DNA from: Ylistrum balloti
Lineage: Eukaryota
DNA length: 64,000 bases
Assembly: GCF_031769215.1 (NCBI RefSeq)
Contig: NW_026781981.1
Span: 62,001 to 126,000, forward strand
Reading direction: 5' to 3'
Shown: positions 39,401 through 61,517 of the stretch, one piece after another
How the letters are laid out: each line of letters opens with the position of its first letter
How positions within the stretch are numbered: the stretch's first letter is position 1
The notes under the pieces: model-generated
Databases searched by the model: none
Told to the model about the DNA's origin: nothing
The model's input: only the letters and a program-made list of their open reading frames with translations
Translations under genes and position numbers: made by a program

Positions 39401-41850
39401 TCGTTCGAACATCAATTCTTTTTACTTCTTGGAAATGCCACTATCCGCCTCGCCCATGGTGGACCGAGAACTCGTAAGGCGAATTCCTCGATGATTTTTC
39501 TCTCTCTTTTTTCATTCTTTGTCATATCGTTGCTAATACCTTCATGGAATTCTTTGTTCTCCTTTAATTTGCCAGTGTTCCTTGGCAGGTTCCTGGAGTG
39601 GTCCTATCATCATTGCCTCGGTCTCTTGCCATCCTGTTCCTTGTATTGGCCTACCATTGATACCCAGCGTACATCCTTATCTATGTATCGTTGTTCTTAT
39701 TGTCATAACTATACATTTATAACGGAGAAAACGCAATAATGTCTGATCATTCATGTATTATATCTTGACCTTCCAGTATACATCTCTGGTTCCATATTAT
39801 TTTTATCACCTGCGAAAAATAGCGTCATAGTTTCGAGACAATACGGAATATCCTTGATATCGATGAAAAACGATAAACAAAACCAAGGTCTTAGAACGCT
39901 CCGTTGTGGGGTTCCGTTTGTCACTCTGTGGCCATGATGGCGTAACGTGATGTACGTAGACGCGTGTATATGTTACTTAGGAAATATTGCATCCAATTTA
40001 TCATTCTCTTAAAGAATCCACATGATTTTAACTTTCCAGTCGAGCTGTTATGGGAATTGTGTCAAATGCTTTTATGAACTCGTGACAAATACATATAGTC
40101 TGGAGAGAATCGCCATTATCAAGACTTTCTTTCACGTGACCAATGACTCCACTTGATAAATCAAAATATCTGTTTACTTAATGGATTGATGGTATAAAGG
40201 TTCTCGTATTTTGTTTTCTTGTGCTTTTGTTTTGTCTTCTTTTGAAATAATGTCACAGTTTATGTTTTCCAAAAAAAAAAAAAAAAAAAAATGGTAGTTT
40301 GCAATCTATGATCAATTGATTGAAAATTATGGGGTTTTTTTGGGGGTGGGGATTAGCTTTTCTGCTCCACGTGATTATGACATATCTAGATTAATGAAAC
40401 TTTAATTCTTTCCTGTGATTTTTCAACAAATTTTTGTATTATTTCCCTGTTCTTCAGTTTTGGAATTTTATCTGACCGTTTTTGTGAAAGCACTACCAAG
40501 GAATTCTAAGAGAATATTCGTGATATTCCTGGATGGGTTTCTGAATTTGAATGGACATACCTCATTTTTTTCGAGATATCTTTAGCCCTTTCGAATTAAG
40601 TATACAACTTCATTTCTAGATACATTTAGTATATATAGGCACATTTTGTCATTTCTTGTGCTATGCTAAGTATTACTGCATTAGACCATGTTTTGTTTAT
40701 TTTGATGTATTTTTTCGTTCAGCTCTGTTAATGAAACTCCTCAGTACAAGATCATATACATGTCCTCCCACAACGGACTGGTGTTGTTCCGGGGAATTAC
40801 GTCCTCTTTCTTTAATCGAACAGGTATGTTTACCCGCCGATACACTGACACGAATCAAGTTTATATTATATTTTGTTACCAAACCTCATAGCCTTCCAAA
40901 TTCAGGCCATTAGTATCACTGACGAGTCGTAGGACGAAACAGTTGTATGATGCAAATCAAAATTGGTATTAAACTGTGTTATTTACTTGTTTACTTAATG
41001 CACGATCTTCGTACAATTTTCCATTGAACATGAACATCTACTACCATTCTTTCTTCCAGGGCATATCGGAGTAGCGTCCCTGAAGAAATTCTTTATGCAT
41101 GCGGCAATGGTGGCATTCGGGGATGGATACTTTGACCGTACTAAAATTGATACTGATTCTACCCGTGCTTTTCTAGTTAGTCAGGGAATGAGAATGTCAT
41201 TACAACTTTACTCCGATATAGCTCATCTATCTTCGTCAAACCTTCTCGTGGAGGTTCGAGCAGCTGCAGTAGGGCGCACGTCTATGACCAATCTCTATAT
41301 CCTGTCATGCGCAGACACTAAAATAGAACTTGCCCGGTGCGTGACTACTCTCGTTTGTACGAGTGTTGATTCCAGACGCCCAACTCCACTGCCAAAATGG
41401 TTCACGGAAAAGTATAAGTCTGTCACTGACACAAATTTGGATATTTTGAAAGATGGAGTAAAAACAAGTCGAGAATTTAGACACGTTCCTCAAGACTGTT
41501 TCCGAATAGAAATAAAAACAAGATATAGTGATACAGATTTTAACGACCATGTCAATCAGTCAGAATATATCCAGTTCTGTCTCGAGAGTGCAACAGGAGC
41601 AACACGCTCCGGGTACTATAGGCACTTTACGTCCGACATACTCTGGTATCCAGTTCTAGAATCAGATATTATACATCTCGGCGAATCTCGCGCCTGCGAG
41701 ATGTTGACTATTTACACATGGCAAGACAAAACGAACATTCAAATAATACATTTTTCTATTCATAACAAATCGTCGTCAAAATGTGTCGCTGTTGCCACAA
41801 TCAAGTTTGATACAGGATCACTGAGACCACAGGCAAATTCAAGTTTGTAA
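36451..41850 (+). CDS. Double HotDog-fold thioesterase-like protein (acyl-ACP thioesterase/4HBT-like). Exons 36451-36479, 40723-40823, 41060-41850 (306 aa)
   Basis: Terminal exon of 791 nt with TRYSDTDFNDHVNQSEYIQFC (D-x-D-x-N-x-H-V-N motif of acyl-ACP/4HBT thioesterases) and an N-terminal HotDog-like stretch VGRTSM...LVCTSVDSRRPTPLP. Upstream exons join in phase (cg|gtaagt, ttcag|c, g|gtatgt, ccag|g). The last exon is secure; exon 1 is less certain. Confidence 0.8.
36870..37350 (-). mobile_element. CR1/L2-like LINE ORF2 C-terminal relic (copy A)
   Basis: Minus-strand translations TTLCLLYKALLQPHPEYEESQVRNP and EDRLKLKPSTRMYRRIRDNMIQLY, compared with CR1 LLYKALVRPHLEY..VWNP and RL..L..YRR.RGDMI. 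Confidence 0.65.
37600..38420 (-). mobile_element. CR1/L2-like LINE reverse transcriptase relic (copy B)
   Basis: Minus strand FQKAFNTALHEKLIRRMLSYGL, YLPDGI, DMKRFSEWS..FHHGKCKSI, IRRIF..LVKLY, ERLNLPPL..MIETPKI; several frameshifts. Confidence 0.7.
38433..38585. repeat. 50-bp tandem repeat, 3 copies
   Basis: TTCGTGTTGTACCTTAGAATATCTATAAATATCGATAAAATATTGTACAA. Confidence 0.9.
38950..40200 (-). mobile_element. CR1/L2-like LINE reverse transcriptase relic (copy C)
   Basis: Minus strand ESLDNGDS..EFIKAFDTIP (40061-40130) and VTNGTPQRSVLRPW (about 39885-39925), which are degenerate DF.KAFD and VTSGVPQGSVLGP RT motifs. The 3' boundary is approximate. Confidence 0.7.
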
Positions 41851-43129: not shown

Positions 43130-44600
43130 ATACTGCCCTCTCCCAAAGAAACACTGTTACATGTCCTCTCCCCCAAAAACAATGCTACATGCCCTCTCCC
43201 CCGAAACATTGTTACACGCCCTCTTAACCTAAAACACGCATTCTCCCACAGAAATATTGTCACATGCCCTTTCCCAAAGAAATTTTGTTACATGCTCTTC
43301 TCCCCAAAGAAACATTGTTACATGCCTTCTCCCAAAGAAACATTGGTACATGCCTTCTCCCAAAGAAACATTGTTACATGCCTTCTCCCAAAGAAACATT
43401 GGTACATGCTCTTCTCCCCAAGAAACAGTGTTACATTCCCTCTCCCAAAGAAGCATTGAAACATTGTTACATGCCCTCTTCCCAAGAAACATTGTTACAT
43501 GCCCTCTCCCAGGAAACATTGTTACATGCCCTCTCCCAAAGAAACATTGTTACATGCCTTCTCCCAAAGAAACATTGTTACATGCCTTCTCCCAAAGAAA
43601 CATTGGTACATGCCCTCTCCCAAAGAAATGTTGTGTCATGTCCTCTATCCAAGAAACATTGTTCCGTGCTCTTCTCCCCAAGAAACATTGAAACATTGTT
43701 ACATGCCCTCTCCCCAAGAAATATTGTTACATACCCTCTCTCAAAGAAACATTGGTACATTCCCTCTCCAAAAGAAGCATTGAAACACTGTTACATGCCC
43801 TCTTCACAAGAAACATTGTTGCATGCCCTCTCCCCAAGAAATATGGTTACATGCCCTCTCACAAAGAAATATGGTTACATGCCTTCTCCCAAAGAAACAT
43901 TGTTACATGCCCTCTCCCAAAGAAACATTGGTACATGCCCTCTCCCAAAGAAACAATGTTACATGCCCTCTTCACAAGAAACATTGTTGCATGCCCTCTC
44001 CCCAAGAAATATGTTTACATGCCCTCTCACAAAGAAATATGGTTACATGCCCTCTCACAAAGAAATATGGTTACATGCCTTCTCCCAAAGAAACATTGTT
44101 ACATGCCCTCTCCCCAAGAAATATGGTTACATGCCCTCTCACAAAGAAATATGGTTACATGCCCTCTCACAAAGAAATATGGTTACATGCCTTCTCCCAA
44201 AGAAACATTGTTGCATGCCCTCTCCCCAAGAAATATGGTTACATGCCCTCTCACAAAGAAATATGGTTACATGCCCTCTCACAAAGAAATATGGTTACAT
44301 ACCCTCTCCCCAAGAGACATTGTTGCATGCCTTCTCCCAAAAAAAATTGTTACATGCCCTCTCCCCAAGAAACATTGGTACATTCCCTCTCCCAAAGAAG
44401 CATTGAAACACTGTTACATGCCCTCTTCACAAGAAAAATTGTTACATGCCCTCTCCCCAAGAAATATGGTTACATGCCCTCTCTCAGGAAACATTGTTAC
44501 ATGCCCTCTCCTAGGAAACATTGTTACATGCCCTCTCCCAAAGAAACATTGGTACATGCCCTCTCCCAAAGAAACAATGTTACATGCCCTTTCGCCCTTG
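43130..44600. repeat. Minisatellite, 28-29-bp unit, about 50 copies
   Basis: ATGCCCTCTCCCAAAGAAACATTGTTAC / ATGCCCTCTCCCCAAGAAATATGGTTAC; it accounts for all ORFs at 43229-44641. Confidence 0.95.
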
Positions 44601-45814
44601 TGGAACAAATGGTTATTTACGGTAATCGTTTAGGCACATAAATACACTGACACAAAGCCACCTGTGAGAACTGGCACGTTCAATTTGTGTTGACCACTTG
44701 AATGGTCGTAGTTAAATGTCACTATGCACTCGGTCGGCTTTAACATGGTAATTAATATGACCAGTTTTATCTAGAGTACTAGAATTTTAATATCTACGTT
44801 TCTCCTGTACGATTCGTCAGGACAATCCAACAGACATTCCAGTACAAGGCTTGACATGGTAATATAAATCGACTGGATTAACCTACAAATGTATGAAATA
44901 TACCAGGTTTAACTTAACGTTTCTTCACTCGCGGGTCACTCTCAAGTTTGAAACCGTGTTTTGAAGGAATAAAGATGTGATATTATTTTCATTCCCTTTA
45001 TGTCGCAGTGCGATTATTTCATGTCCTTCAGTTATTAAGCATATCGGTAAATAAAATTTATTTGTTTCAGTGCAACATAATGAAAGATAAACCAGTCTAA
45101 AGCATAATGGTAACACTTACTATACTAAACTGAAACGTGATCTAGCCGGTAGTGGGTTCTAGACACTGGACAAAGTCGTCTTACATGTACGTGTTAGTAA
45201 TGATATCTAGATATTTTTTTAACTGATCCCAATCGACACGTGGGCTTTAAAGTTGTGGTGGGCTGTACAATTATCTGTATATACATGTATTCATGTTCCG
45301 ACCTGGATATCGGCACACAACAAGGCACATACCAGGTATGTAGGTAAGACTGGCATTACAGGTGGGTATTGAAATGTATTATTGACAGTGCAGAATGCAT
45401 TGACGACAAACATAAATGGTTTTCGGATATTTATTTACATGATCTACTATATGTTCATTGTCAACATTTATGTCAAGTAAACAGACAGTGGTGTTAGTAA
45501 CAAGAGACGAATTGTGTTTCTGGTAATCGCTAGATTTAAATTATCAATAATTCAAGCGCGAACAACACTGCTCCCTGTTTAGGTTTACTGTGCAGCGTAA
45601 TTATAGCATTGTTAATACAGGCTTGTCAACAACACGAGAAAACAAATATACTTATGTGTTTTAGTATACAACCACTTCTTGTTACAGATAATTTGTGAGG
45701 TAGCTACATATATATTACAAGTAAATCCTTGTTAAATACCAGTGGACTTAAACACACGATACATTTATACATCTACAGGATGGTATCCGAGAGATTATCT
45801 TCAACATTGAGTGA

Positions 45815-48294
45815 ATGGGCAATGTGGTAAATCCGAACACCCGGCACACCAGTGTCGGTAAGTTATGTCAGTGTAGTAACAGACTTTCATGTTTCCTGCG
45901 ATTTAAGATAAAAAAATGTTTTAATCTTTTTTAAAATTGTGAGATATGTTAATGTCTTCTTTGATTTTGGCATACATTCACAAATCTGTAAATCTCTATA
46001 TTATAATGTTTAAATCTATCCTATCTGTCTTGGTACCTGTAAGCACTGTGCTCAATGTTTCTTTTGTTGGTATTTCTAAACCGTTTAGCGGAATATATGT
46101 GATTTACTGATCTAAAACCAGGAACGGGATTCATAAATAAATCTTATTTAATTAAATGAAGTTTTATTTTAGGTAATAAACTTTAGATTTTTCATGAATC
46201 CCGGTCCTGTCCACGATCAGGGTTACTGACGTTAAATAACTAAATAAAATTCCTTCTCGTTATGTTTGCCATAGTTTGCGATATAAAAATAGACTTTCTT
46301 AACTACAACTTGTATGTAGCAGGCTGTATCTATATTGCCTACAAGTTCCGTGATTCATTGGAAGTCAAAAACATTTATGAATACTGGCTTAGTCTAACGA
46401 TTGACTTCAATAACATTTTATCACATGCATTGGCCCTTATTTTTCATTTTATTGATCAGTGTTCTATATACATATGTAGATAATGTTAGCGGTGAGGATC
46501 CCGCTCCTTGGATGTCCACGACGGTCCGCTCCAATAAAACATGGAACGACCACCTTATCGTGAAGGCGACAGGTTTCAGGAAGATTAACGACAACACAGT
46601 GGTTAATCAGTCAAAAGGCAAGTAAAATCAAGGGAGACAACTCCCATAGCTTCCCGTTTTAAGTGACTTTATTCCAGTTACACGCAAGAATTATTATGTT
46701 TCAGAAAGCCTTGCTGTAGAAATCGCTTTATGAGTGGTCAAATGTTAATACAAGTATATTGTTTTTACGTTTATGAATCAGATTATTAATGTAGGAAAAT
46801 CTATCATAGGTATGAACGCACCGTACTGTCTGGAAACACACTTTATATACAAGTATATATGAAAGACCTTATTTACCAAATTTAGATGACAGGAATATTG
46901 ACCTTTATCAGTATTTCAGAATGAATAAAAAGTATCTTACTATTTTCTTTTTAAAAGCGACTATATGATCAAACGAATTAAAACTCCCAGAAAATTATCT
47001 CTTACATTTAATTGAACGGGCTTTTGCTTTTAACCGTTTTTGGAATGGAACTAGACAACAAGAACAGATCAGTCTACGCATTCCAAACTTCCATGATAAA
47101 AACTTCAATCCTAGTTTTCTGATGACGAGGTGTGCACGTGTGTCGGCATACAGTCAGCAGGGTTCCTACTGTCATCTGTGATAGTTTTGTTCGTAAATCG
47201 TGGCATGTTCACGACAACAAAGTCAAAAATAAATAGATAAGAATAAATAAATTCTCAGAAAATCAGAACCCTCTCAGACTATTTTTAGACCAGGTAACAT
47301 TTAATTATTATGTATTACCGTCATTAAACACTTTGAAACAGAGAATCATGTAAAGATAACTATAATAATGATTTTTTTGTTTATTTCAGACCCGGAGAAA
47401 ACATATGGAATAAAGTGGAGTCGAGGCTTTTCTAAAGGCCGTCATATATTTGAAATAAGTTTTCCGACTTGGATGCGAGGAAACCATGCAAGTGTAGGGA
47501 TTGCAAACGAAATAGCACCGATCTACCATCATAAAAGTGTTGCCCTGGTAGGAGAAACGCAGGACTCTTGGGGCATTGATCTTGTGACGTCACGAACAGT
47601 TCACAAGGGAAAGGAAATATCAAAATATCCCAAGGGAAATAGATGTCAATTACCGGATAGGTTTTACATGTATATCGATATCCCTGAACGGAAACTGTTA
47701 TTCGGAGCTGATGGGGTATTTTACGGCAGTGCATTTTCCGGTATGGACATTGAGGGACAGACTGTATATCCTATGATATCAGCTACGTCACCAGGGGCAA
47801 CAGTCACCATGGTGTACAGAGGCAAAGGTAAGAGGTGTTAATGGACATACAAGTGAATAACACCTTTTCTTACAAAATTTATGAACTAAACAGCACCACA
47901 CAGCTATTTCGCCCTTATAGGGTTCATTAGAGAGGCTAAATCGTTGAAACAAGGATGCGATTGAGGAAAAACAAAATTGGCTGAAATGAATGTTAAATTG
48001 AAAGGGAAGCGTTTTTTGCCCCGAATTCAACAAAATTTATGAAATCTCATTATTTTCTTATGACGCATGCCACTATTCGAGTGAGTCAAAACAATGCATG
48101 CAGGTTATTACATGTAATAAATTTATTTTGGATCTAGTACCATTGATGCTTTAAATAACAGCATTTAAATGACAATTAATTCGATATTTGCATGGCTCAA
48201 CATTCATTACTTTGCCATAAACTGATGGTTTCACTAATCATCTTTTCCTTTTGCAGGCATTATTGTGACAGGTCCTATCCGCAAGACAAGATGA
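45815..48294 (+). CDS. SPRY-domain protein of SPSB/gustavus type, no SOCS box seen. Exons 45815-45857, 46480-46617, 47390-47827, 48257-48294 (218 aa)
   Basis: Exon 47390-47827 reads GFSKGRHIFEI..RGNHASVGIA..APIY..LVG..QDSWGIDL..YPMISA, which parallels SPSB1 GYTRGLHVWQI..RGTHAVVGVA..APLH..LVG..ESWGWDL..YPVVSA. All junctions are phase 1. The N-terminus MGNVV resembles the MG start of SPSB proteins. Intron 2 uses a predicted GC donor. Confidence 0.8.
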
Positions 48295-49700: not shown

Positions 49701-51649
49701 ATATAAAACAGACCATCATTCTTTATGTCCTAGGTCATTTATCTTACTTCACATTAGCTTTATCACAATAAAAATAAGTAAATGTGAAAATGTTTATATA
49801 TATTTGCATTGTAAAATTTAAAAAAAAAAAGGAAAAAAATCCAAATTTATCAACCTCTACCGACAAAAACATCTATCTTCACAGTGATAATGAACCACAG
49901 TCTCTAACTTTATGTAAATAAAACTGTATATAATTTTGACCTGGTTTCCCTTTTAATAAAACCATGTGAACATTTGCCCTTTTTCTAAAACTAAAAATGT
50001 TGAACAAAGGACTTTATTTGTGTATAATGGTGGACAAATTTGTGCCGCCTTCAGTTTGGCTACTTCATTTTCTATGTAGTGAATATAGACCAAGTCGGAG
50101 AGATGTTATACTCCAGACATACAACCAAAAGGGCTATAATAACAATCGGCCATAAACATTTCAATAATGCAAAACTAAAAAGCCTTAAAAAGTCATAATA
50201 TTATGAACCATATATATGTACAACCTTTCCCATCATAAATCTACAACTATTTCCCTAACTGCTCTCGGTATTTAAAAAAAGTCAAAGAACAAGTAAGCTA
50301 TTCTTTGGTATTGAATACTAAACAAACAAATATACCACAGAGACAAAATTTTTATACAAACTAAACAGATATAGAAAACTTTTATCATTACTACAAAAAT
50401 TACAACTATTTCTCTGACTTGGGACAGGAAAAAACAACACAAGACCAGAAAAAATTCATGTCTATCACACACGGCAAAATCCATTTTGACTTGTTGTTGG
50501 TATAAAAAATAAACAAATTATATCAAAACATTGATAAGTGATTGAAACTATAAACAGTTGGACTTTCCAGACTGTGCAAGGAAGTACCCTATAGACAAAC
50601 CATGACTAGATCTGAACGTGGTCAGTGGTAATATGCATGGGTGTATATTGGTGAAACGGTAAGGTAGAAAAACTCAAAGAAAATTTTGAAATGAAAAATT
50701 ACCAAGGGTTATAATTTTGTTGAAATTTGATGGAAAATATTGAACTATTTGTAACCTGATTTATCAAGCACATCCATTGAAAAAGACACAACAGTGAGAA
50801 AAATTGGCAGATGGACGGATGCTACAAAGTTTATATACCATGATAAAACCCATTGATACTATAACAAATCAAAGTTCACAAAGTTATAGTTAAATATAAA
50901 TACAAAAAGTATCCTGTAAAGGGTATACATACAATAGTCTTTGAGCCCAATCCAATAACATACTGTTAAATTAAACTTGTGTTTTCAGGGTTTTTTGGTA
51001 ATATGTTTTAAGAATATTATAGATCGGAGTCAGAAAATAAACTTAATTTGAAAGTCAACATGACTTCACAACAGATTCATTATGGAACAAAGTGATGCCG
51101 GTAAGCTTCCTGACCACTCCATCTATCAATGTGAAGCTGATTCTGATTTCGTCATTTCGGAATGTCCATGTTACATTTGGCTACGTAAAACATTGTGAGA
51201 TTTCCCAGATGGTGAGAATATGCATATCTTTTATATGCAGTATGTAAATACCCAAGACTTTGATCTGTTGGAGAGCCAATCATTTTTGCAGGTCAAAATT
51301 TTTGCCATTTTCAGCTTGAACAAGTAAACTGAACTCTTATGAATTAAAATTTTGCAATTGTGATGGAAGAAGACATTAAATTTATAACAATAAATATACA
51401 TGAGACCTGATTTATAGGTCAAATACTGATAATATTCATAATAATGATAATAATTGGTGCTTACATATGTTAGTATACTCTGTACCATGGAACAAGTGAT
51501 CCGTATCATCATAACATTTCAATTACATTTTTTGAAATACCCTTGTATAATTGAAAAACAGCCAAGTCAAAAATAAGTACAAACACCCGCCATATGATTT
51601 GGTCAGTTAATATTTTTAAAGCTCATATCATGTTGACAGAAATTGAACC

Positions 51650-53689
51650 CTAATCCTTCAGCTGAAGAGCCTTGTATGCCAAGTGTATCCTAGTAGTCAG
51701 GTTTTGTTTGTCCTGTAGGAGCTGGTCCAGGCCAAGACTGCCCGACTCCATCAACATACCTGTGAACAGTGAAAAAAGAGATAATGGTTTAGACTATTCC
51801 ATCAACAAAAATTGCTGACTAGACTATTACATTCACAAAATGTTGATGACTAGAATATTCCATCAACCAAAGTTTGGTAACTTGACTTTAGCAATAAATA
51901 TCACCTAATGTGTGTTTGTCATATTATACAATTCATCTAACAGTGTCAGTATAAGAAAAACATGGCAAATATTTAACTTCACCTTTTTTCACCCATTAAG
52001 AGTGAATTTACTGGTATTATGATCGAACCTGTAATTTTGGAAGCTGTATCTGGATCAGGATAAATGTTTTCCACTGCCTCAAACAACTGATCTCCTATGG
52101 AATCCTCGGAGACTGAGCACTCATCGCTTTCATTATCAGATACCTCCTCGGCTACTTCAGACTCTGTAGCTGACAGTGACAGTAATGCTTGAGATACTGC
52201 CTGTTTCAGGATATTTGAATTTTGTAACATCATTTCAACTTCCACAGATTCTGCTTCTAGTAACATTCCTTAAAGGAGAAATAGGAATATCATAAAACAA
52301 GAGGTTGGGAAAATCTGTATGTACATATCACAGGCAAAAAAATGTATAAAGTGCCTGTATGTATGTATTATCAGCACTATGAGGTGTTAGAACCTGTATG
52401 TATATTATCATTGGTAACAAGAGGCAGGATAAAGAGTCTGTATGTATGTATGATAGGCAACAAGAGGTATAAAGGGCCTGTTTGTATGTATTATTGGTAG
52501 GATGAGGTGTTAAGAACCTGTATGTATATTATCATTGGTAACAAGAGGCATAGATGAAGAATCTGTACGTATGTATGATAGGCAACAAGAGGTATAAAGG
52601 GCCTGTTTGTATGTATAAGAGGCACCAAGAGGTGTGAGGAGCCTGTATGAATGCATTATAATATATGTGCACAAAGAGGTGTTAAAGACCTGTATTATCA
52701 TTGGTACCAAGAGGTATATATAAACAGTCTGTATGTATGTATTAAAGGTAACAAGAGAAGTGAAGAGCCTGTTTATATGTAGTGGTAGGTATTATAGGCA
52801 CCAAAAGGTGTGAAGAGTATGTATTAGAGGCAACCAACCTTACCTGTAATCTGGCAAGACAATGCCGGCTCTATTTCACTGACTTTTTCAAACAATTTAT
52901 CAGCAACAGAAAGAGGAAGAATTTCAGAAGCTGGAAGTGCCTTGACTAATTCATTTCCGTTTATGTAAGACCCACTACAGCAAAAGAAACAAACAATGTA
53001 TAGGACTATAGAATGCTACACTGCATTATTCTCTAAGGTCAGAGATATTCTACCTTACAAGCATGCATTTCCTATTTTTGATTTCTGGTCGTAGCATCCA
53101 TTCTTCATCATAACTTAACTATTCATCTAATTGCAAAGTACTTCATAAATACATGAACAATAATTGCCAATATGTTAATTTATCAATATGCTTACTACCA
53201 GGTTGTTTAAAATTCCTATTGCATTGAAATTTTACTGTACTAAAAAAAAATATGTTATCATTATGTAAAAATCTGCCAAATTATGAAACAAACTATCAAA
53301 CAATTAGCCTGACTATGACTCACTGGTATAATGAAGACAATTAACAATCTTCTTGATTCTTATTTATGTAGAACTGGGACAGCTATCACATTTACATACC
53401 ATTCCTTCAAAGTATTTTCAGCTAAACGGATTCTAGATCCAAGGAAATCTTTGTCCTCCAGCAGACGAAAGGCTTCTTCCTTCCCACATTCCAGTAATAT
53501 TCCTGTAACTTTCTGAGCATGTGATTCATTTCTACAAGACTCGAGAACCTTACTGTACAGATGTTCACCTACAACTTCCCTGAAGTCTAGCAACTGGGGA
53601 TGTTTTCCGTTGTAAGATTTCTTCTGTGACATTTTGGAGATGTACACATTGACGTAGTCTAATTGTAATATTTTACTAATTACCATCAT
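51650..53689 (-). CDS. Protein with three tandem MLLE (PABC)-like domains. Exons 53689-53400, 52974-52844, 52268-52029, 51759-51650 (256 aa)
   Basis: Spliced product has three copies of the MLLE pattern: VVGEHLY..AQKVTGILLE..LLEDKDFL, VADKLF..SCQITGMLLE..MLQNSNIL, IGDQLF..ASKITGMLME..LLQDKQNL (PABPC1 consensus LGERLF..AGKITGMLLE..MLES). Phases are consistent. The donor at 52028 (GTTCGA) is weak and the start codon is uncertain. Confidence 0.85.
52340..52832. repeat. Degenerate intronic tandem repeat (units about 40-45 bp)
   Basis: Recurring CCTGTATGTATATTATCATTGGTAACAAGAGG and AAGAGGTATAAAGGGCCTGTTTGTATGTAT blocks inside an intron of the MLLE gene. Confidence 0.7.
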
Positions 53690-54675
53690 CTGCTGCCATG
53701 ACGTTGATGCTTTAATTGATTATACTAACATTGGGGATGTGGAACCTTGTGATGGTAGGAGGGGAAGCGCCATACATTCATCTACGTCATTTTCTGTTAT
53801 TTTGGCAAGATGTTAGACTCATAACATCAAACATTGCCTTAAATCTTGATGAATCATCACTTTGATTTTCCAAAATCAAGTTTTAGAAATTGATTTTTCC
53901 TCGGGAACTGGACAGTATTTAATTTTTCAACTCTTGCATTTTCTGAAATCAATCTTCTTGAAGTTAATGTTACCTGAAAAGAGAGACAATAAGAATTGAT
54001 AAAGTTCTTCCAAACATTTCAATTTCAACTTTCAATTTTCAACAATGGTATTGTCATGATACATATGACACAAGGATTGGACTTTAAACAGTTAACATAT
54101 ATACATATAATACTTCTGATTAGTCAAGCATATTTTAATCGAACTTCATTCTTATTTCAAGTGTTTTGAACAAAATCATAAAGCTATAACATAGTAAATA
54201 TGGTAGACCAAATATAATTAGCTATGTCACACCATTGACTAAAACTAAAGACTCTCCAATCATAGCCTTCCCTTCTTTGGTAACTACAGACTCTTTTGTC
54301 AAAACTCTGGCTCTAAGTGTTAAATTCATATTCATTAACACAATTCTGGACCTGATGGTTCCATTTCAATCATAGCATTATTCAAACTGGAATCTATGCA
54401 ATACTGATAACCCTTCCCAACCTAAAACTACTGACTTACATTTTTTTCTTGGCGTGAACCATAAACCAAAATCTGTAATATCAATGTGGATTTGGTCTAA
54501 AAAAAATCTTCAACAATTAGCAGTTATCTCCCTTTTGCCGATCAACCACGCAAACTGAGAGTTTTATACAACACATTTTTTCACATCGAAATTATTGAAA
54601 TTCTGAATACTGATGTTTAACGTGATATCTACAAATGTACATATGGCATCTTGGTGCATTGAAACACTTATTTAC

Positions 54676-54760
54676 CTGAGCTATTTACTTTCCGTAAATT
54701 TTAGTGATCAACCTGTCGTATTTCCTTTTTAGAATTTCATCTGTTTCCGGCGAAGAATAT
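54676..54760 (-). other. Putative non-coding 5' exon of the triple-MLLE gene
   Basis: Minus-strand donor CAG|GTAAAT at 54675 pairs with the acceptor tctctcttttcag ending at 53974. An ETS-like CCGGAA lies near 54745. The upstream boundary is approximate. Confidence 0.4.
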
Positions 54761-54946
54761 TATTCATCCGCTACCCAAAAGAGTTCTGTATTGTAGCTAT
54801 AATAGTAATTGATTTCCTCCATAATATGTCACATGCATTATCACTAATTTGATGAATACTATCCGTTTAATAAAAATAATATTAAAATGTCAAAAATACG
54901 TGTGTTAGTCTTCGATCAAATCATTGCCACGAACTACTTTAATATC

Positions 54947-54971
54947 CTCTTTCTCGCTGTAACTTCCTGAG
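54947..54971 (+). promoter_or_regulatory. Putative TCT/5'TOP initiator and short non-coding exon 1 of RPL28
   Basis: CTCTTTCT at 54947-54954 fits the YYCTTTYY TCT motif typical of ribosomal protein genes. It is followed by the donor GAG|GTGACC at 54972; the matching acceptor tttgcag ends at 56341, just before the ATG exon. Confidence 0.55.
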
Positions 54972-56356
54972 GTGACCATGCTTTCTTTGCTTCTTCATTC
55001 CATACTTCAAATACCCTGACCAAACGGTTTTCAAATTGATATATGTATTAAAAATAAACATTAATATGACATGGTTATTGTTAATGTTTATATGCAGTCA
55101 CTTTGAAACTACTTTCCATGTGTTTTAACACGCTTGCGTTGTCCCCCTTCCTTCGAAACAGACACGTTTTGGAACGTGTGATAAATAACATACGAGACTC
55201 TGCACAATTACAACAGGCACTTTAATGTAATTGTTGATAATTATGATGTGTCGAATCTTAAACTAAGAAAAATATATATGTTAGGCACAAACCGATCACC
55301 ATAGCCTATATTTCCGCCAACTGTGAACTGTCTTCATACGTTGATCAAAGCCGCCCCCCCCCCAAAACCTCAAATGCAATGCAGAGGGAAGTGATTCATG
55401 CGTAATTCATTTGATATAAGCTGTATATTGTGTCGAAGTTATAATTTTTACGATTTAGCTCCGCCCAGACCCTCGAAATCGATGCTGACTTTCACGGCTT
55501 TATTTTAACATGACCAAGTCTCCATCCAAAATAATCCAGAATGTTGCTTATAGTTAGAGAAACTGACCAGTTATAGATTGATCTTACAACTTCAAATTTC
55601 GGACTATCGAAGTTGTTTGACCTCAGTTTATCAGATGTTGACATTACAATGAATGAAGTAAGCTAAAATAAATGCCAGGCATAGGAATATGGCTTAAAAC
55701 CTCGAAGATATTGCAGCAAATTTTATGTACCCTCACCAACCTTATATTTTAAGATCAATTATACATAGTTTCTACATTATATCACAAGTTTTGTTGCAAA
55801 GGGAGGTAATCTGAATCCCTTCTGTTGGTAAAAGAAAATGAAGAGTACCAGGTATTTTACAAATGAACAATTATTGGTCTCTTTGTGTTATATTCATGCT
55901 AACATTATTAAGTGGCAGTGGTTGCCTCAAAATGTTGATCCAAGTCCATTGTATCATATAAGGTTTAAAGTTTTTAATTTTTTTCTTGGCTACATGCATG
56001 TTTTCGATGACAAACCCCTGTATAGATATTTGTTGATATTTGCACTATAGATTCACATCATGAAATTTTACACCAGATTAGATTTTGTGGTAATCTGTCA
56101 ATGGAGAATTCACCCTAAAATGCTCTGGGGCAACAACAATGCTTTGTGGAGCAATGCAAAATATTTTGTTCTAATCCTTATAGAAATGGGCACAGATATA
56201 TCAAGAAATGTAGTTCTGATATAACAACTTGCTAAATGTCTGGATTGTGTTTGGTAGTTATTTCTCAGTGCATCTGCAACTAAAGTACCATGTATACATG
56301 CTCTTTGTATAATCTACTGTATTGATATTTTGTTTTTGCAGACTTAAGAAGTCACC

Positions 56357-58736
56357 ATGTCAGCCGATGTACAATGGGCCATCATCAGGAACAACTCAAG
56401 TTTCCTGTTGAAGGGAAACAAGAGAACCTTTAGCATGGTTAGATTCAACTTTTCATAATTCAATAACATTGATAATGTATCACCATGACATGAAGTTTTG
56501 GTTACATGAACAACATTTTGATTTTGCTGGCTTTGGCAGAGTTGATGCACATTGTTAGTGTTCATAATGTACATGGATATATTGTCCTGCAATCTTCCTC
56601 TGTTTCAACAAATTTCTTTCAAACTTGGTAGGTTTTATAGCTATGACATGAATTTGTGTTTTGGCAATTAGATTCAACAATTTTTTTCAAGGAGTTCCTT
56701 CCCTTTGAATTTTTTTTACTTTGAGCCAAGATCTCCTTCCTCAGTTTTTCTCCAATGGATTTTAAGTTGTTTCCTTTGTCTAGATGTCACGTGTTAATGA
56801 TATCATATTGCATTTCAGGAGCCCAACAATTTGAAGGCTATCAACTCATTCCGCTACAATGGTCTGGTTCGGCAAAAGACCATTGGTGTAGAGCCAGCCA
56901 AGGATGGCAAGGGTGTGGTCTTGGTCACACGAAACTCCTCTGGTAGGTATATCAATCAGAGGTATATCATCAACTTGAAAAGTTTTCAAATTTTCAAATT
57001 GACTGTATTTGGAAGATTACTGCCCTTTGTTGCTTATTTTGAAATCTTGTCTCAGTTTTCAAACGATTCCTCTCAAACTTGGTAGTCTGAAGTCACTATG
57101 ATATGAATTGGTGTTTTCCTACACAGCAGATTGATTCAGCAATGTTTGAACGAGTAATTACCCTTTGCTGTTTCAGCATTTTAATTTTGTGCTTAGATCT
57201 CCTTTCTCATTTTTCACCAATTTCAATGAAACTTGGTAGATTTTATAACCTTTATATGCCATACTGGCATTGTGATTTTACAATTCAAGAAAGAGTCATT
57301 ACCAATTTGTTTCTGTTTTAGTTTTTTTACTTCATTATTTTTCTCTAATCCAGATACCTCCTCCCTCAGTTTTCAACCAATTTCCACAACAGGAGAACAT
57401 GAGATTGTGTTATAGGAAAGCATTATGATTAAAAAAATATTTTCCAAAAGTTGATGCCCCTTGTCATTTCCAGCCTTGTAATTCCACCCATCTCTTCAAA
57501 ACCTTTTTGGTTTGTTTTGACTAATTATTAAAAACCTGTTTTGTCATTTTTACCGTTTCCATATTTGTAATTGTTTTGAAACAACAAATCCTGAATAATT
57601 CCTTGGCATGGGACGGGCATGTATTGTTCTGCCCTGTGTTCTACCTGAGTTTACATAATTTTACACCTCATTGTTTATGTGATTCACTGGTCAATTGCAG
57701 ACAAAGTTAACAACAGAGTGTAATCACTGTAAGGTCTTAAGTCATCAGACATGGCATTTTATTCACATATGTACTTGTCAGTCTGAACATAATTCATAAT
57801 ATACAGACTAGAACTTTAGTTTAGTTTAAGTTTTTTGTCTGTATATCAGTTCATATAAAAAGTTTGTAGAACCTGTGAATCAGTTCAATGAATGTGCACA
57901 CTATAGGGGGAATAGTCCAGGGTCAAAAGTTACACTTAACCAATTTGGAAGAAAAAAAAGATAAACTGTAGGCCTATCCTTAGTACAGTAATATAACATT
58001 TTTATTCAATTTACGTTGTCAAGGTTGTAGGGTCAACTATTTGAATTTTCAATGAATACTCCAAAAGAAACTTAGAAAGCTGAAATAGTTCCTGTTAGAC
58101 ACCATTTTGGTACTGACCTAATGTTATTTATGGCATTGTTAGACAAGACTACTGACTTGGAAACCAGGTTCTGACAATGTAGTTGTCAGTACGTGTGTGT
58201 AGTTTAATTGGTTAATGTAGAAACATGTAGTCAATACAAATTAATCTATTTTATTGCAGGATGGAGGAAGCCCAATAAGAACTACACGAAGATGGAACTG
58301 AAGAGAGATCCCAGGCGTGTACTGGGCACCATCAGGAAGACTGTTAGAAACAACAGATACAGGAAGGACCTGAAGATGGTGAGTCAGGATTTCTTTTTGT
58401 CAAAATTCCTGTTTTTGGACAGTGATGATTTAGGACATATTCCAAGTCTTGAACTTAGTTGTTTGTTATTGAGTTTTTCCCTGTGGCATTTTATCATACA
58501 TTCCCTAGATATGTTACAAAATATATTGCCATACAATTTGACTATCTCTGTACAAGTTAACAGACTGTCCAATGAAATAATGTGTGTACTATACAGATAT
58601 ACAACACTACTTTCTCGAGTTATACTTGGTTCTCAGTAACAGTTTAATATTGCAGGCTGCTATCCGACGTGCCAGTGCCCTCCTGAAGAGCCAGAAGCCA
58701 GTGGTCGTCAAGGCAACAAGAAAATCCAAGAGTTAG
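56357..58736 (+). CDS. RPL28: 60S ribosomal protein L28 (eL28). Exons 56357-56437, 56819-56942, 58260-58378, 58656-58736 (134 aa)
   Basis: [74 protein letters not shown]; canonical GT-AG introns in phase; AATAAA at 58754-58759. Confidence 0.98.
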
Positions 58737-61517
58737 AAATGTACATAGCGGCTAATAAACGTGGAAAAGAAATTTCATGCTTTGTGTGGTTTATCAGTAT
58801 TGTGTTCATTAGCATTCTTTGTAGCTCGCATTTTGCAGCAACAAAACAAATTCGTGTTGAAATGGGTTATTAGCTTTGGATGTTTTTAGTATAATCGTTA
58901 CAGTTGCAAGTGGTAGACACTGTTGGTGGACATTTTGTCCCCAAGGCTTCCTGTAACAAGTGTTTAATGTATTTAAATAGTCATATTTAAGATTTTACAC
59001 ATGTACTAGACTTTTTTTTTTTAAATTGAAGATACTATACATTAAAATCGTGAAATTTATCTAATTAGAGGGCCTCCCAATCTTTTGATCAGTTTTGCTT
59101 TCCTCATTTACCTCCTAGGTTGAAAATTTAAGCCTGTAGTATCACTGAGGAGTCCTGAAGACACAACAGCTGTATGAGGCAGTTAAATTCATTGTTAGGC
59201 TCTACTGTATCTAACTCTGAAACTGGATTGAAAAGTGCTATTCATTTGTGTGTCCTTTGCACAATCTTCAGAATGTATAACTTCATCACTGATATATGGA
59301 AATATTTTTTTGCTGTTGTACAAAAAAGTAGATACTGATAATGCCATACTTGGATATTGTTTTATGACCAGATAATAACACCAATAAATCCTACTTCTTT
59401 CCAGTAGGAAATTCACTAATTTTTTAATCTGATTTCAAGTCTGACCTGTGAAGTCTCCGATATGAATGCTAGATACATTCCACAGCTTTCTGACAAGATT
59501 TTAGAGTTTAGGATTGGCTCAAGTTTTGAATTGGATATAAATTAAAATCAATATGCTTCAGACCAATATAATTATGACCTTAAGAGAGAGATACAGCTAA
59601 TGTCATAATTCGTATCAAATATATTGGATGTCTTGTTCTGGGTATGAATACAGAAATTAGGCAACTAGTATTGGAACATGCCAATAAGTGAGACAAATTG
59701 ATACATTTACTTGATATTTTCATTTCAACATTGCTAAATGTTACACAAAATACAGTTTTAAAGGAATTCAAATTACAAAAGATCCATAAAACTTGATTGG
59801 GCAATAAAACCACAGTCAAACTGGTGATATCAGATCTAAATCGTAACTTGACCGTAGCTGTGATGCATTACCTTATGTCCTAAGTTTTCCTTACCTTACC
59901 AGTATATCTGACTTAATACAATCAGTCAGAACTGATATTACTAGGGATTCTGACCATCCTATACTTTTTGATAGCACAGTATCTCCCTTTGTATCCTACA
60001 GTGATGAACCCACAAACAAACAAACAAGAATTTATTGTACATAAATATAATTTAATCATGACTGCTTAGTAATCATGTATGCAAGGGTTTATAAAAAAAC
60101 AAGCGACCCTCTTAAAGGGCTGACAATATCACAATTAATAGGATACCTACGCCCTACTAACATGGTATACATGATAGCTACAACTGATGTCTGGGATTAT
60201 TACACAATCCATACATTTACACACCGATCAGAAACAAAGTGTTCCACTATATGAAATTACTATTGATGCTCATTAATGAGTAGTATGTCCAATATTTATT
60301 GCTAATGACCCTATCATAACTGCATTATATTTAACCAGACAGTGCGATACATCTAGTTTTTCCGTATTAACTGCTGGTATACATATCTTGGTGTGATGAA
60401 ATTTTAGTACATCAAGTTTTAACAGATTAAATATGTTGATAAAATTGGTGCATCTACAAAATTTATTATAGAAAATTGTAGCCAAAAATACGATGAGTGC
60501 AATTATAAATTAAGATTACCACGTATTGATATATATTATAAGTACAATTACTGTATGTTAAAAATTTGGATGAATGGACCTCTTGTACATATCTTAAAAT
60601 CAATTTTACCTTTGTAAACATAGTTGTAAAAATTGTCTTTCCCAAGCATTTACAAAAAACCTGTAAATATTGGTACAACAGCACAGGAATAACACATTTA
60701 CCTTTGTATATATAATAAATGGGTACATTTTTCTGTACGGACACATTTCTCATTAACATCACAATTAAGTACTGATGAATTTAGAAGTAATGAACCTACT
60801 TCTAGAATATGTTAGTATGAAATCATTTAATAAGAATTAATTTTCTCATTAGTTATGTATAAATGAATTCACTAACATGATGAAAACAGATCTATCTGAC
60901 TTCATACCCATATTATAAAGTATGCACGATTTCTTTCCAAATACTATTCAATGACTTCCAATGAAATATTGCTGTTACACACAACATCAACAAACCTATC
61001 TATAATATCAAAATACAATCAATACCACGATCAGAAGTTATCTTTCCTAGACAGTATAATGGCAAGACACCTGTACATACTTGTGACCTTATTAATTACT
61101 AGGATATTTATACTCTGTTGATTGTTATAATCAAACCTTACTGAATTTGTCAGTATGAAGTTATTCAAATGTCTTGTTTGCATAATTAAAAATTAACACA
61201 AACCTCTCAAAAAACTTTCATAATATTAGTTTTACGATTAAAAAAAACGAGATTTTCATAACACACATTATCAAAGGAATTTTAAATGTAAATTTTTCTT
61301 GCAATATATAAAATTAAAGAAAATAAAAAGGTTATACATGTATAACTATTGGAATTCAGATATACCATAAAACTAAGACATTCCAGTACTAAATGTTCAC
61401 TTATGTATATAGTCAAATGAACTGTATGTAAAACAGAATATTTGTGAAATACAGTAGACAACGATCAACTAATCCCTGCAAATTTTTAGCACTGGGATGT
61501 GATTCTAGTTCTACTCA

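What the first reader, a model, noticed from the sequence alone, without database searches (positions are those of the whole stretch)
51650..53689. Stand-alone animal protein built from three tandem MLLE (PABC) domains, with no RRM or HECT domain
Seen: the spliced 256-aa product is a short leader followed by three MLLE-like repeats (KVTGILLE, QITGMLLE, KITGMLME cores), with an acidic linker between domains 2 and 3. Known: animal MLLE domains are described in PABPC (with four RRMs) and UBR5/EDD (with HECT); they bind PAM2 peptides of eRF3, PAIP1/2, TOB, LARP4, ataxin-2 and GW182. A tripartite MLLE array is described for fungal Rrm4 (Ustilago). Inference: this could be a multivalent PAM2 scaffold or PABP decoy, meaning an uncharacterised translation or mRNA-decay regulator.
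Basis: partly seen in the sequence, partly recalled or inferred. Interest (0 to 1): 0.72.

Follow-up and report, generated by a model that had tools for sequence, protein, structure and literature searches.

The report
Conserved animal protein of three MLLE domains
This scallop gene really does encode a small protein made only of three MLLE (PABC) peptide-binding domains. It belongs to an unstudied family found from sea anemones to fishes, and in many of those animals it sits head-to-head with the ribosomal protein gene RPL28.

Summary
Four minus-strand exons with GT-AG introns (53689-53400, 52974-52844, 52268-52029, 51759-51650) splice to a 256-aa product. That product is identical to RefSeq 'uncharacterized protein LOC132544685 [Ylistrum balloti]'. 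Pfam MLLE scores 123.9 bits in three stretches, and AlphaFold gives three confident helical bundles that superpose on PABPC1 and UBR5 MLLE structures.

It is not a PABP or UBR5 fragment. There are in-frame stops upstream, both neighbouring genes lie on the opposite strand, and every ortholog is MLLE-only. A spliced mRNA contig from a related scallop matches all four exon junctions, and dN/dS against it is 0.10.

The family has 3 or 4 MLLE domains and no other domain. It occurs in cnidarians, molluscs, a brachiopod, an annelid, a nemertean, echinoderms, hemichordates, amphioxus, lamprey, sharks and teleosts, always labelled 'uncharacterized'. I found no paper on it.

- The bilaterian invertebrate members checked share introns inside the 'TG|MLLE' motif of domains 2 and 3.
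- A head-to-head RPL28 neighbour is present in 7 of 11 species, from mollusc to shark.
- The 19-aa leader is not conserved, so the true start is probably M20 (237 aa).

Residues that contact PAM2 in PABPC1 are kept in all three domains, so a multivalent PAM2 binder is plausible. Binding itself is untested, and no RNA data exist for this species.

The parts
53400..53689 (-). Coding exon 1. It holds the model's ATG at 53689, the conserved ATG (M20) at 53632-53630, and all of MLLE domain 1. It ends at a GT donor (53399-53398).
   Evidence: ortholog starts; L001 mRNA block 373-622 aligns to 53652-53400
53402..53584 (-). MLLE domain 1 (aa 36-96, core KVTGILLE)
   Evidence: Pfam 47.4 bits; family HMM 68 bits; pLDDT 86-97
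52844..52974 (-). Coding exon 2. It encodes linker 1 and the N-terminal half of MLLE2, up to ...QITG.
   Evidence: L001 622-754 aligns to 52975-52843
52168..52916 (-). MLLE domain 2 (aa 117-174), split by intron 2 inside the ITG|MLLE motif (phase 1)
   Evidence: the same intron position occurs in Pecten, Lingula, Lytechinus, Patella, Owenia and amphioxus
52029..52268 (-). Coding exon 3. It encodes the C-terminal half of MLLE2, the acidic Ser/Glu/Asp linker, and the N-terminal half of MLLE3 up to ...KITG.
   Evidence: L001 752-982 aligns to 52270-52028
52111..52167 (-). Acidic, serine-rich linker between MLLE2 and MLLE3 (aa 175-193). It has low pLDDT and is the fastest-evolving segment (dN/dS 0.27).
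51659..52110 (-). MLLE domain 3 (aa 194-254, core KITGMLME), split by intron 3 at the same motif position and phase as in MLLE2
51650..51759 (-). Coding exon 4, with the TAG stop at 51652-51650
   Evidence: L001 978-1087 aligns to 51763-51654
54722..55044 (.). Conserved non-coding block in the RPL28/MLLE intergenic region. It is 70% identical to Pecten overall, with two sub-blocks above 90%. It lies in the only CpG-rich patch of the spacer and is a candidate shared bidirectional promoter or first non-coding exons (inference).
56357..56440 (+). Start-codon exon of the divergently transcribed ribosomal protein L28e (RPL28) gene. Further exons lie near 56816-56944, 58280-58375 and 58661-58736.

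Best explanation
What it is. This is a real, selectively maintained protein-coding gene of the scallop Ylistrum balloti (RefSeq LOC132544685). Its product is three MLLE/PABC helical bundles strung on flexible linkers and nothing else. It is the scallop ortholog of an ancient metazoan family of MLLE-only proteins with 3 or 4 domains, found from cnidarians to fishes. In the bilaterian invertebrates checked the gene has the same exon structure. In molluscs, a brachiopod, an annelid, amphioxus, a shark and a teleost it lies head-to-head with RPL28.

Most likely mechanism (inferred, not shown). Each domain keeps the PAM2-binding groove of PABPC1 and UBR5, so the protein would bind PAM2 or PAM2-like linear motifs at up to three sites at once. 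Likely partners are eRF3, PAIP1/2, ataxin-2, GW182/TNRC6, TOB, LARP4 and PAN3. Having no RRMs, it cannot sit on poly(A). It would therefore act away from the tail, either as a competitor that titrates PAM2 factors off PABPC, or as a scaffold that bridges several of them. The conserved divergent pairing with a ribosomal protein gene suggests its level is coupled to the translation machinery.

Confidence by step:
- Real stand-alone MLLE x3 gene and family: about 0.95.
- Binds PAM2-type peptides: about 0.6.
- Decoy versus scaffold: open.
For: Gene model and identity to the RefSeq protein.

Three MLLE domains:
- Pfam 123.9 bits in 3 stretches.
- Per-domain PDB sequence hits to PABP and UBR5.
- AF2 model with three bundles at pLDDT above 90, linkers below 50 and pTM 0.40.
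- Foldseek top 30 hits are all MLLE structures, with rmsd 0.5-0.9 A and TM (by target) 0.7-0.93.

Not a fragment:
- In-frame TAA 11 codons upstream of the first ATG.
- In-frame stop upstream in the ortholog mRNA contig L001.
- RPL28 (+) upstream and an SPRY gene (+) downstream, both on the opposite strand.
- No Pfam domain above its gathering score in upstream minus-strand ORFs; the one sub-threshold hit was Rota_NSP4 at 18.7 bits.

Spliced and expressed in a relative: L001 (1325 nt, run SRR23580857) is collinear with the four exons, with the junctions exactly at the predicted splice sites.

Purifying selection: dN/dS is 0.105 overall and 0.07-0.14 in the domains.

Family:
- 65 cluster representatives, mostly 200-260 aa with 3 MLLE stretches.
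- 1099 proteins at E<=1e-10 with the family profile. The named ones span Cnidaria, Lophotrochozoa, Echinodermata, Hemichordata, Cephalochordata, lamprey, sharks, sturgeon, bichir and teleosts.
- Among the 178 fetched proteins, 106 have three domains and 55 have four.

Position-specific domain orthology: domain labels need 24 changes on the tree, against 81.6 for shuffled labels. PABP-type MLLEs form a separate clade with 99% support.

Shared TG|MLLE introns.

RPL28 head-to-head in 7 of 11 species.

PAM2-contact residues conserved in all three domains: with the residue list from PMC2854688.
Against: - No RNA data for Y. balloti. The only public run holding this locus is DNA.
- No binding, localisation or phenotype data exist for any family member.
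- Gly579 of PABPC1, whose backbone approaches the PAM2 Phe, is not Gly in this family. It is Q, C and S in the three Ylistrum domains. UBR5 shows 'ASKITG' at the aligned place in my reading of its sequence (from memory, not tool-verified), and PMC9249222 reports that UBR5 binds PAM2.
- Domain 2 has Ala for Gly563 and Gln for Lys580.
- Domain 1 has Ile for Met584.
- Residues lining the Leu pocket (K606, E609, V613, H617) differ, so specificity may have shifted.
- No AATAAA or ATTAAA lies within 1 kb downstream of the stop.
- RPL28 linkage is absent within 10 kb in Lytechinus, Nematostella, Patella and Ptychodera.
Confidence: 0.6

Rival explanations
1. The MLLE domains have diverged to recognise ligands other than canonical PAM2. 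These could be acidic PAM2-like motifs, as for Rrm4 MLLE3 and the UBR5-HECT contact, or unrelated partners. The protein would then be an adaptor in a pathway unconnected to the PABPC partner network.
For: - Non-Gly residue at position 579 in all domains.
- G563A and K580Q in domain 2, and M584I in domain 1.
- Divergent Leu-pocket periphery at K606, E609, V613 and H617.
- PABP-type MLLEs form a separate clade with 99% support.
- PMC9249222 shows that Rrm4 MLLE1/2 are non-canonical and that MLLE3 binds PAM2L but not PAM2.
Against: The residues forming the Phe pocket are strongly conserved across about 94 family members in every domain: G563, E564, F/Y567, T582 and L586, together with M584, L585, E587, A610 and L614. 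The UBR5 comparison at position 579 rests on my memory of its sequence, but PMC9249222 reports that UBR5 binds PAM2.
Confidence: 0.3
2. The model is a truncated piece of a longer PABPC-like or UBR5-like gene, with RRM or HECT exons missed upstream.
For: No RNA reads for this species. The 5' UTR and transcription start site are unmapped.
Against: - In-frame stops upstream in the genome and in the ortholog mRNA.
- The upstream neighbour is RPL28 on the other strand. The same arrangement is seen in Pecten, Lingula, Owenia, amphioxus, shark and mackerel, where the MLLE gene models are also MLLE-only.
- No RRM or HECT hit in upstream minus-strand ORFs.
- Dozens of independent transcript-sized contigs encode 200-260-aa MLLE-only proteins.
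Confidence: 0.02
3. It is a decaying duplicate (pseudogene) of PABPC 3' exons with no function.
For: No canonical poly(A) signal nearby. No expression data in this species.
Against: - Intact ORF and canonical splice sites.
- dN/dS of 0.10 against a scallop that is about 1.2 synonymous substitutions per site away.
- Orthologs with the same exon structure across phyla.
- Synteny conserved since the bilaterian ancestor.
Confidence: 0.02

Closest known systems
[quoted passage not shown]
   Same: Same Pfam family (PF00658) and the same helical-bundle fold (rmsd 0.6-0.9 A). It shares the KITGMLLE helix 3 and most PAM2-contact residues.
   Different: - No RRMs and no proline-rich linker.
- Three domains instead of one.
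- Gly579 is replaced.
- PABP-type MLLEs form a separate clade in the domain tree.
UBR5/EDD/HYD MLLE domain
   Same: Four-helix MLLE. In my reading of the UBR5 sequence (from memory, not tool-verified) it has Ser rather than Gly before KITG, as in domain 3 here. PDB chains 3ntw and 1i2t superpose with TM 0.85-0.93.
   Different: UBR5 is a ~2800-aa HECT E3 ligase with a single MLLE. Nothing else of UBR5 is present here.
Ustilago maydis Rrm4 tripartite MLLE platform (PMC9249222, PMC11572963)
   Same: Three tandem MLLE domains on flexible linkers forming a multivalent peptide-binding platform.
   Different: - Rrm4 carries three N-terminal RRMs and is fungal.
- Its MLLE1/2 are degenerate, with Ser or Arg at the Gly563 position.
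- Here there is no RNA-binding domain, and all three domains keep a near-canonical groove.
- No evidence of common descent of the arrays.
Arabidopsis MPC (MATERNALLY EXPRESSED PAB C-TERMINAL; Tiwari et al. 2008, cited in PMC4307191)
   Same: A stand-alone protein consisting of the PABP C-terminal domain without RRMs, proposed to regulate translation.
   Different: It is a plant protein with a single domain and is an imprinted endosperm gene. I did not compare it by sequence here.
Database entries 'PABC domain-containing protein' / 'uncharacterized protein LOC...' (for example Pecten maximus LOC117316855, Lingula LOC106168265, S. purpuratus LOC100892654, Nematostella LOC5510140)
   Same: True orthologs, with the same architecture. 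The bilaterian invertebrates share the exon structure, and several share the RPL28 neighbour.
   Different: Nothing essential; they are only annotated, never studied. Cnidarians, amphioxus, sharks, sturgeon and bichir have four domains.

Membership tests
MLLE/PABC domain (Pfam PF00658) | Profile match above the curated gathering score | tested here: met
   123.9 bits in 3 stretches against a cutoff of 27; exon 1 alone scores 47.4 bits
MLLE/PABC domain (Pfam PF00658) | KITGMLLE signature on helix 3 | tested here: met
   KVTGILLE, QITGMLLE and KITGMLME
MLLE/PABC domain (Pfam PF00658) | Four- or five-helix right-handed bundle | tested here: met
   Predicted only. The AF2 bundles have pLDDT above 90 and superpose on 3kus, 3ntw and 6h7a at 0.5-0.9 A.
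MLLE/PABC domain (Pfam PF00658) | Binds PAM2 peptides (xxLNxxAxEFxP) | not testable with these tools
   Only the conservation of contact residues could be scored.
Cytoplasmic poly(A)-binding protein (PABPC) | Four N-terminal RRM domains | tested here: not met
   No RRM in the protein or in upstream ORFs. In-frame stops lie upstream.
UBR5/HYD E3 ligase | HECT catalytic domain and UBR box | tested here: not met
   The only Pfam family above its gathering score in P0076 is MLLE; the related PABC_AtC3H46 scores 24.1, below its cutoff of 27.
Rrm4-type RNA transporter | Three RRMs followed by a tripartite MLLE platform | tested here: not met
   Tripartite MLLE is present, RRMs are absent.
Metazoan MLLE-only (3-4 domain) family, unnamed | 200-350 aa made of 3-4 MLLE domains with no other domain, and reciprocal best similarity | tested here: met
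Metazoan MLLE-only (3-4 domain) family, unnamed | Phase-1 introns inside TG|MLLE of domains 2 and 3, with domain 1 in one exon | tested here: met
   Ylistrum. The same holds in Pecten, Lingula, Lytechinus, Patella, Owenia and amphioxus.
Metazoan MLLE-only (3-4 domain) family, unnamed | Head-to-head neighbour RPL28 | tested here: met
   Window RPL28 ATG at 56357 (+) against MLLE ATG at 53689/53632 (-). Six other species share the arrangement.

The most novel reading that the evidence does not exclude
RPL28 and the MLLE x3 gene form a bidirectional unit that dates from the bilaterian ancestor. The MLLE-only protein would be a dedicated, dosage-coupled regulator that buffers the pool of PAM2 factors (eRF3, PAIP, ataxin-2, GW182, TOB, PAN3) against the ribosome and PABP supply. 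That would be a third class of animal MLLE protein, overlooked because it may be missing from tetrapods and from the ecdysozoan model species.
Probability: 0.25. Interest if true: 0.8.

Novelty: new variant of a known kind. Interest (0 to 1): 0.62.

Why it matters
The PABP field treats MLLE as a domain of PABPC and UBR5, plus fungal Rrm4; PMC9249222 says so explicitly. A conserved animal protein consisting only of three or four near-canonical MLLE domains would be a ready-made multivalent PAM2 binder that cannot bind poly(A). That is the kind of factor that could titrate or bridge termination, deadenylation and miRNA-silencing factors.

The family occurs in experimentally tractable groups (teleost fishes, sea urchins, Nematostella, amphioxus), so its function can be tested directly. 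Its linkage to RPL28 over more than 500 million years is one of the rarer kinds of conserved microsynteny and points to shared regulation with the translation apparatus.

Tried and rejected
- Word search with exon 1 (96 aa) found nothing. Its length window of 53-168 aa excludes the 237-256-aa family, so this is not evidence of absence.
- RNA evidence: the look-up of sequencing runs returned one run (X1). Its contigs cover the introns, so it is DNA. Expression in Y. balloti therefore remains untested.
- I looked for a 5' UTR exon by aligning the L001 5' UTR to the window and to Pecten, and found no match. The idea that conserved block 54722-54787 is the first MLLE exon is thus unsupported and left as a guess.
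- An Rfam scan of 51000-59500 found nothing, so the conserved intergenic block is not a known RNA.
- A search for AATAAA/ATTAAA within 1 kb downstream of the stop found none.
- P0009 (1414 aa, '9 stretches') is a repeat-sequence false positive with no MLLE by the family HMM.
- The fragment and pseudogene readings were considered and rejected (see rival explanations).
- Literature searches for multi-MLLE, MLLE-only or 'PABC domain-containing protein' in animals, and for six ortholog LOC identifiers, returned only the Rrm4 papers or nothing. The library holds open-access papers only.
- Absence from tetrapods, arthropods and nematodes is only suggested. None is among the 120 listed of 1099 hits. 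It was not tested.
Full report
**1. Observation.**

Reading the minus strand of 51650-53689 gives four exons with canonical GT-AG introns: 53689-53400, 52974-52844, 52268-52029 and 51759-51650. The spliced CDS is 771 nt and encodes 256 aa plus TAG.

The product is identical over its full length to P0076, NCBI 'uncharacterized protein LOC132544685 [Ylistrum balloti]'.

Evidence for three MLLE domains:
- Pfam MLLE (PF00658) scores 123.9 bits in three stretches, against a cutoff of 27. Exon 1 alone gives 47.4 bits.
- Each domain searched alone hits PABP and UBR5 MLLE chains in the PDB. Domain 1 hits yeast Pab1 (1ifw) at 7.5e-6, domain 2 hits Leishmania PABP1 (6h7a) at 1e-5, and domain 3 hits PABPC1 (8smo) at 1.2e-3.
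- The three repeats align to each other at z = 7 to 14.5 over shuffled sequences.
- An AlphaFold2 model built with a 21-sequence family alignment has three helical bundles with pLDDT mostly above 90. The linkers (107-113, 184-192) and the first ~30 residues are low, and pTM is 0.40, so the domains behave as beads on a string.
- The best 30 Foldseek PDB matches are all MLLE structures of PABPC1, PABPC3, UBR5/HYD, Leishmania PABP1 and U. maydis Pab1. Rmsd is 0.5-0.9 A over 53-62 residues and TM by target is 0.7-0.93. E-values are weak only because the domain is small.

**2. Not a fragment, not a pseudogene.**

- A TAA lies in frame 11 codons upstream of ATG 53689.
- The upstream neighbour is ribosomal protein L28e on the opposite strand, with its ATG at 56357 and Pfam Ribosomal_L28e hits on two exons. 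The downstream neighbour is an SPRY-domain exon, also on the plus strand.
- Ten minus-strand ORFs between 55.5 and 61.2 kb have no RRM or HECT hit, and no other hit above a gathering score.
- A 1325-nt Logan contig from run SRR23580857 (L001) encodes the Argopecten-type ortholog without interruption. It aligns to the window in four abutting blocks whose ends are exactly the predicted splice sites. It also has an in-frame stop 12 codons upstream of its MSQK start. This shows a spliced mRNA with the same exon structure and a closed N-terminus in a related scallop.
- Nei-Gojobori dN/dS between the Ylistrum CDS and L001 is 0.105. By segment it is 0.07 in domain 1, 0.105 in domain 2, 0.137 in domain 3 and 0.27 in the acidic linker. 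dS is about 1.2, which is near saturation.
- No RNA run exists for Y. balloti. The single run that holds the locus is genomic DNA.

**3. N-terminus.**

The Pecten maximus (237 aa), Argopecten irradians (235 aa) and Mizuhopecten orthologs begin at the equivalent of M20 (MSQK.../MAQTK...). The 'MAIT' of P0001 is a GTG start chosen by a prokaryote-style gene caller. Nucleotide conservation with Pecten and L001 starts only about 20-27 nt upstream of the M20 ATG (53632), just after an AG at 53661-53660 that could be an acceptor. The 19-residue leader is therefore probably not part of the conserved protein.

**4. The family.**

An exhaustive phmmer search with exon 1 over 1.84 billion cluster representatives gave 65 hits. 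Most are 200-260 aa with three matched stretches.

Names retrieved for representatives and for a profile search (1099 proteins at E<=1e-10, 120 listed) cover:
- scallops, Pinctada, Mytilus, Patella and Haliotis;
- Lingula, Owenia and Lineus;
- sea urchins, starfish, a brittle star and crinoids;
- Saccoglossus, Ptychodera and Glandiceps;
- Branchiostoma and Lampetra;
- several sharks, a sturgeon, Polypterus and many teleosts;
- the cnidarians Nematostella, Exaiptasia, Actinia and Desmophyllum.

Every one is labelled 'uncharacterized', 'hypothetical' or 'PABC domain-containing protein', apart from two similarity-based PABP-like names. No tetrapod, arthropod or nematode appears among the 120 listed; this is suggestive only.

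With a family HMM, 106 of the 178 fetched proteins have three MLLE domains and 55 have four. The four-domain forms are in cnidarians, amphioxus, sharks, sturgeon and bichir.

A tree of 123 single domains is poorly resolved because it has only 59 columns. Even so, the labels cluster strongly, needing 24 changes against 81.6 for shuffled labels. PABP-type MLLEs form one clade at 99%. Invertebrate domain 2 forms a 96% clade together with vertebrate domain 3 and amphioxus domains 1 and 3. The array is therefore old and position-specific, not a set of recent duplications.

**5. Gene structure and synteny (new here).**

tblastn mapping of orthologs onto their genomic loci shows a shared layout in Ylistrum, Pecten, Lingula, Lytechinus, Patella, Owenia and amphioxus (the last two domains). 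Domain 1 lies in one exon, and introns sit inside the TG|MLLE motif of the later domains. Shark and mackerel have that intron in every domain. Nematostella has introns between domains instead.

Gene tables and my own tblastn with the window's RPL28 exon peptides show RPL28 on the opposite strand, start to start with the MLLE gene, in seven species:

| Species | Start-to-start distance |
|---|---|
| Ylistrum | 2.7 kb |
| Pecten | 6.0 kb |
| Lingula | 1.3 kb |
| Owenia | 1.2 kb |
| Branchiostoma | 2.0 kb |
| Heterodontus | 1.5 kb |
| Scomber | 1.1 kb |

It is not within 10 kb in Lytechinus, Nematostella, Patella or Ptychodera. An SPRY gene follows in both scallops, and an ODR4-like gene follows in amphioxus and Ptychodera.

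Within the Ylistrum spacer, the only CpG-rich stretch (54.6-55.5 kb) holds a 323-bp block conserved with Pecten, containing two sub-blocks above 90% identity. Read on the RPL28 strand, one sub-block contains a pyrimidine tract (CCTCTTTCTC) and an ACTTCC motif. I take these as candidate TOP-type start and ETS-type sites. That reading rests on general knowledge of ribosomal-protein and bidirectional promoters and is not tested.

**6. Mechanism.**

Kozlov and Gehring (PMC2854688) list the PABPC1 MLLE residues that hold PAM2:
- The Phe pocket is formed by Gly563, Glu564, Phe567, Thr582 and Leu586, plus the carbonyl of Gly579.
- The Leu pocket is formed by Met584, Ile588, Lys606, Glu609 and Ala610.
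- Val613 and His617 make a further contact, and Lys580, Gln560 and Glu587 make polar contacts.

I mapped these onto an HMM alignment of all domains, with the numbering checked on a PABP-type sequence. Across 93-94 three-domain proteins, G563, E564, F/Y567, T582, G583, M584, L585, L586, E587, A610 and L614 are the majority residue in each of the three positions, mostly above 85%.

In Ylistrum the three domains read as follows:

| Domain | Conserved contacts (G563 E564 F567 T582 G583 M584 L585 L586 E587 A610 L614) | Notable change |
|---|---|---|
| 1 | G E Y T G I L L E A L | M584I |
| 2 | A D F T G M L L E A L | G563A; Lys580 is Gln |
| 3 | G D F T G M L M E A L | L586M |

Position 579 is never Gly here (Q, C and S). 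UBR5 shows 'ASKITG' at the aligned place in my reading of its sequence, which is from memory and not tool-verified, and it is reported to bind PAM2 at 3.4 uM (PMC9249222). The periphery of the Leu pocket differs from PABPC1.

The simplest reading is that all three domains are competent peptide binders of the PAM2 type, possibly with shifted preferences. Three such sites on flexible linkers would give avidity for partners with several motifs, or allow bridging of partners. One linker is acidic and serine-rich, with many S-x-x-D/E sites; these could be CK2 targets, which is inference. Without RRMs, the protein would act off the poly(A) tail, as a competitor of PABPC MLLE or as a scaffold. None of this is shown.

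**7. Known versus new.**

The domain is textbook. The locus is already a RefSeq model, and UniProt labels the orthologs 'PABC domain-containing protein'. In the searchable literature, the phrases for multi-MLLE proteins occur only in the Rrm4 papers. PMC9249222 states that only PABPC1, UBR5 and Rrm4-type proteins are described with MLLE domains. Six ortholog LOC identifiers appear in no paper. A plant single-domain analogue, MPC, exists (PMC4307191).

I therefore file this as a new variant of a known kind: a third, unstudied class of animal MLLE protein. It has a conserved exon structure and an unusually old linkage to RPL28.

**8. Verdict.**

The main uncertainties are expression in this species, the true start codon, the actual ligands, and the taxonomic limits of the family.

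Noticed in passing
window 52312-52660 (intron 2 of the MLLE gene): Minisatellite with nested periods of about 40, 83 and 125 bp (2.7-8.4 copies, 68-85% matches). A smaller 31-bp repeat lies in intron 3 at 51790-51871.
   Followed up: partly
window 43230-44640: Dense tandem array that stays open in several frames on both strands, with units like ...PLPKKHCYMPSPKETLLHA.... The Pfam hits are spurious low-complexity matches. It is probably a satellite rather than a gene.
   Followed up: no
window 41095-41850 (+): Single uninterrupted 251-aa ORF with thioesterase-like hits: 4HBT_2 at 28.9 bits and Acyl-ACP_TE_C at 28 bits.
   Followed up: no
window 47368-47841 (+); L002 22547-23898: SPRY-domain exon downstream of the MLLE gene on the opposite strand. 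The same neighbour is present in Pecten maximus.
   Followed up: partly
window 50600-51649 (-): No AATAAA or ATTAAA hexamer within 1 kb downstream of the MLLE stop codon. The 3' end of the transcript is undefined.
   Followed up: partly
window 51768 and 55617-55998 (run X1 against the window): Structural polymorphisms in the only public DNA run: an 18-bp insertion 9 nt upstream of the intron-3 acceptor, and a 380-bp deletion/replacement in the RPL28-MLLE spacer.
   Followed up: no
P0016 (Babylonia areolata, 1573 aa); P0013 (Blattamonas nauphoetae, 406 aa); P0036/P0043/P0059/P0062 (metagenome and Logan, 300-600 aa): Other multi-MLLE architectures exist:
- a gastropod protein with 7 MLLE domains;
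- a protist protein that UniRef names 'Protein kinase domain-containing protein', with a 3-MLLE tail (the kinase domain was not checked here);
- an unnamed family with a basic N-terminal region followed by 3-4 MLLE domains.
   Followed up: partly
L006 14273-22145 and L010 14238-21932: An ODR4-like gene lies tail-to-tail downstream of the MLLE gene in both amphioxus and the hemichordate Ptychodera. This is a second conserved neighbour among deuterostomes.
   Followed up: no
P0076 aa 97-116 (window 52917-52974 plus the end of exon 1): Linker 1 (...NELVKALPASEILP...) is as conserved among scallops as the domains (85% identity, dN/dS 0.11), yet it is not alignable across phyla. Its ASEILP stretch loosely resembles the AxEFxP half of a PAM2 motif. 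It could be a helix-1 equivalent of domain 2 or an internal ligand.
   Followed up: no
L008 6572-17877 (Owenia fusiformis): The deposited gene model fuses EF-hand exons with RPL28 across the MLLE gene. It is probably an annotation artefact, because the RPL28 exons map to 7218-8825 only.
   Followed up: partly
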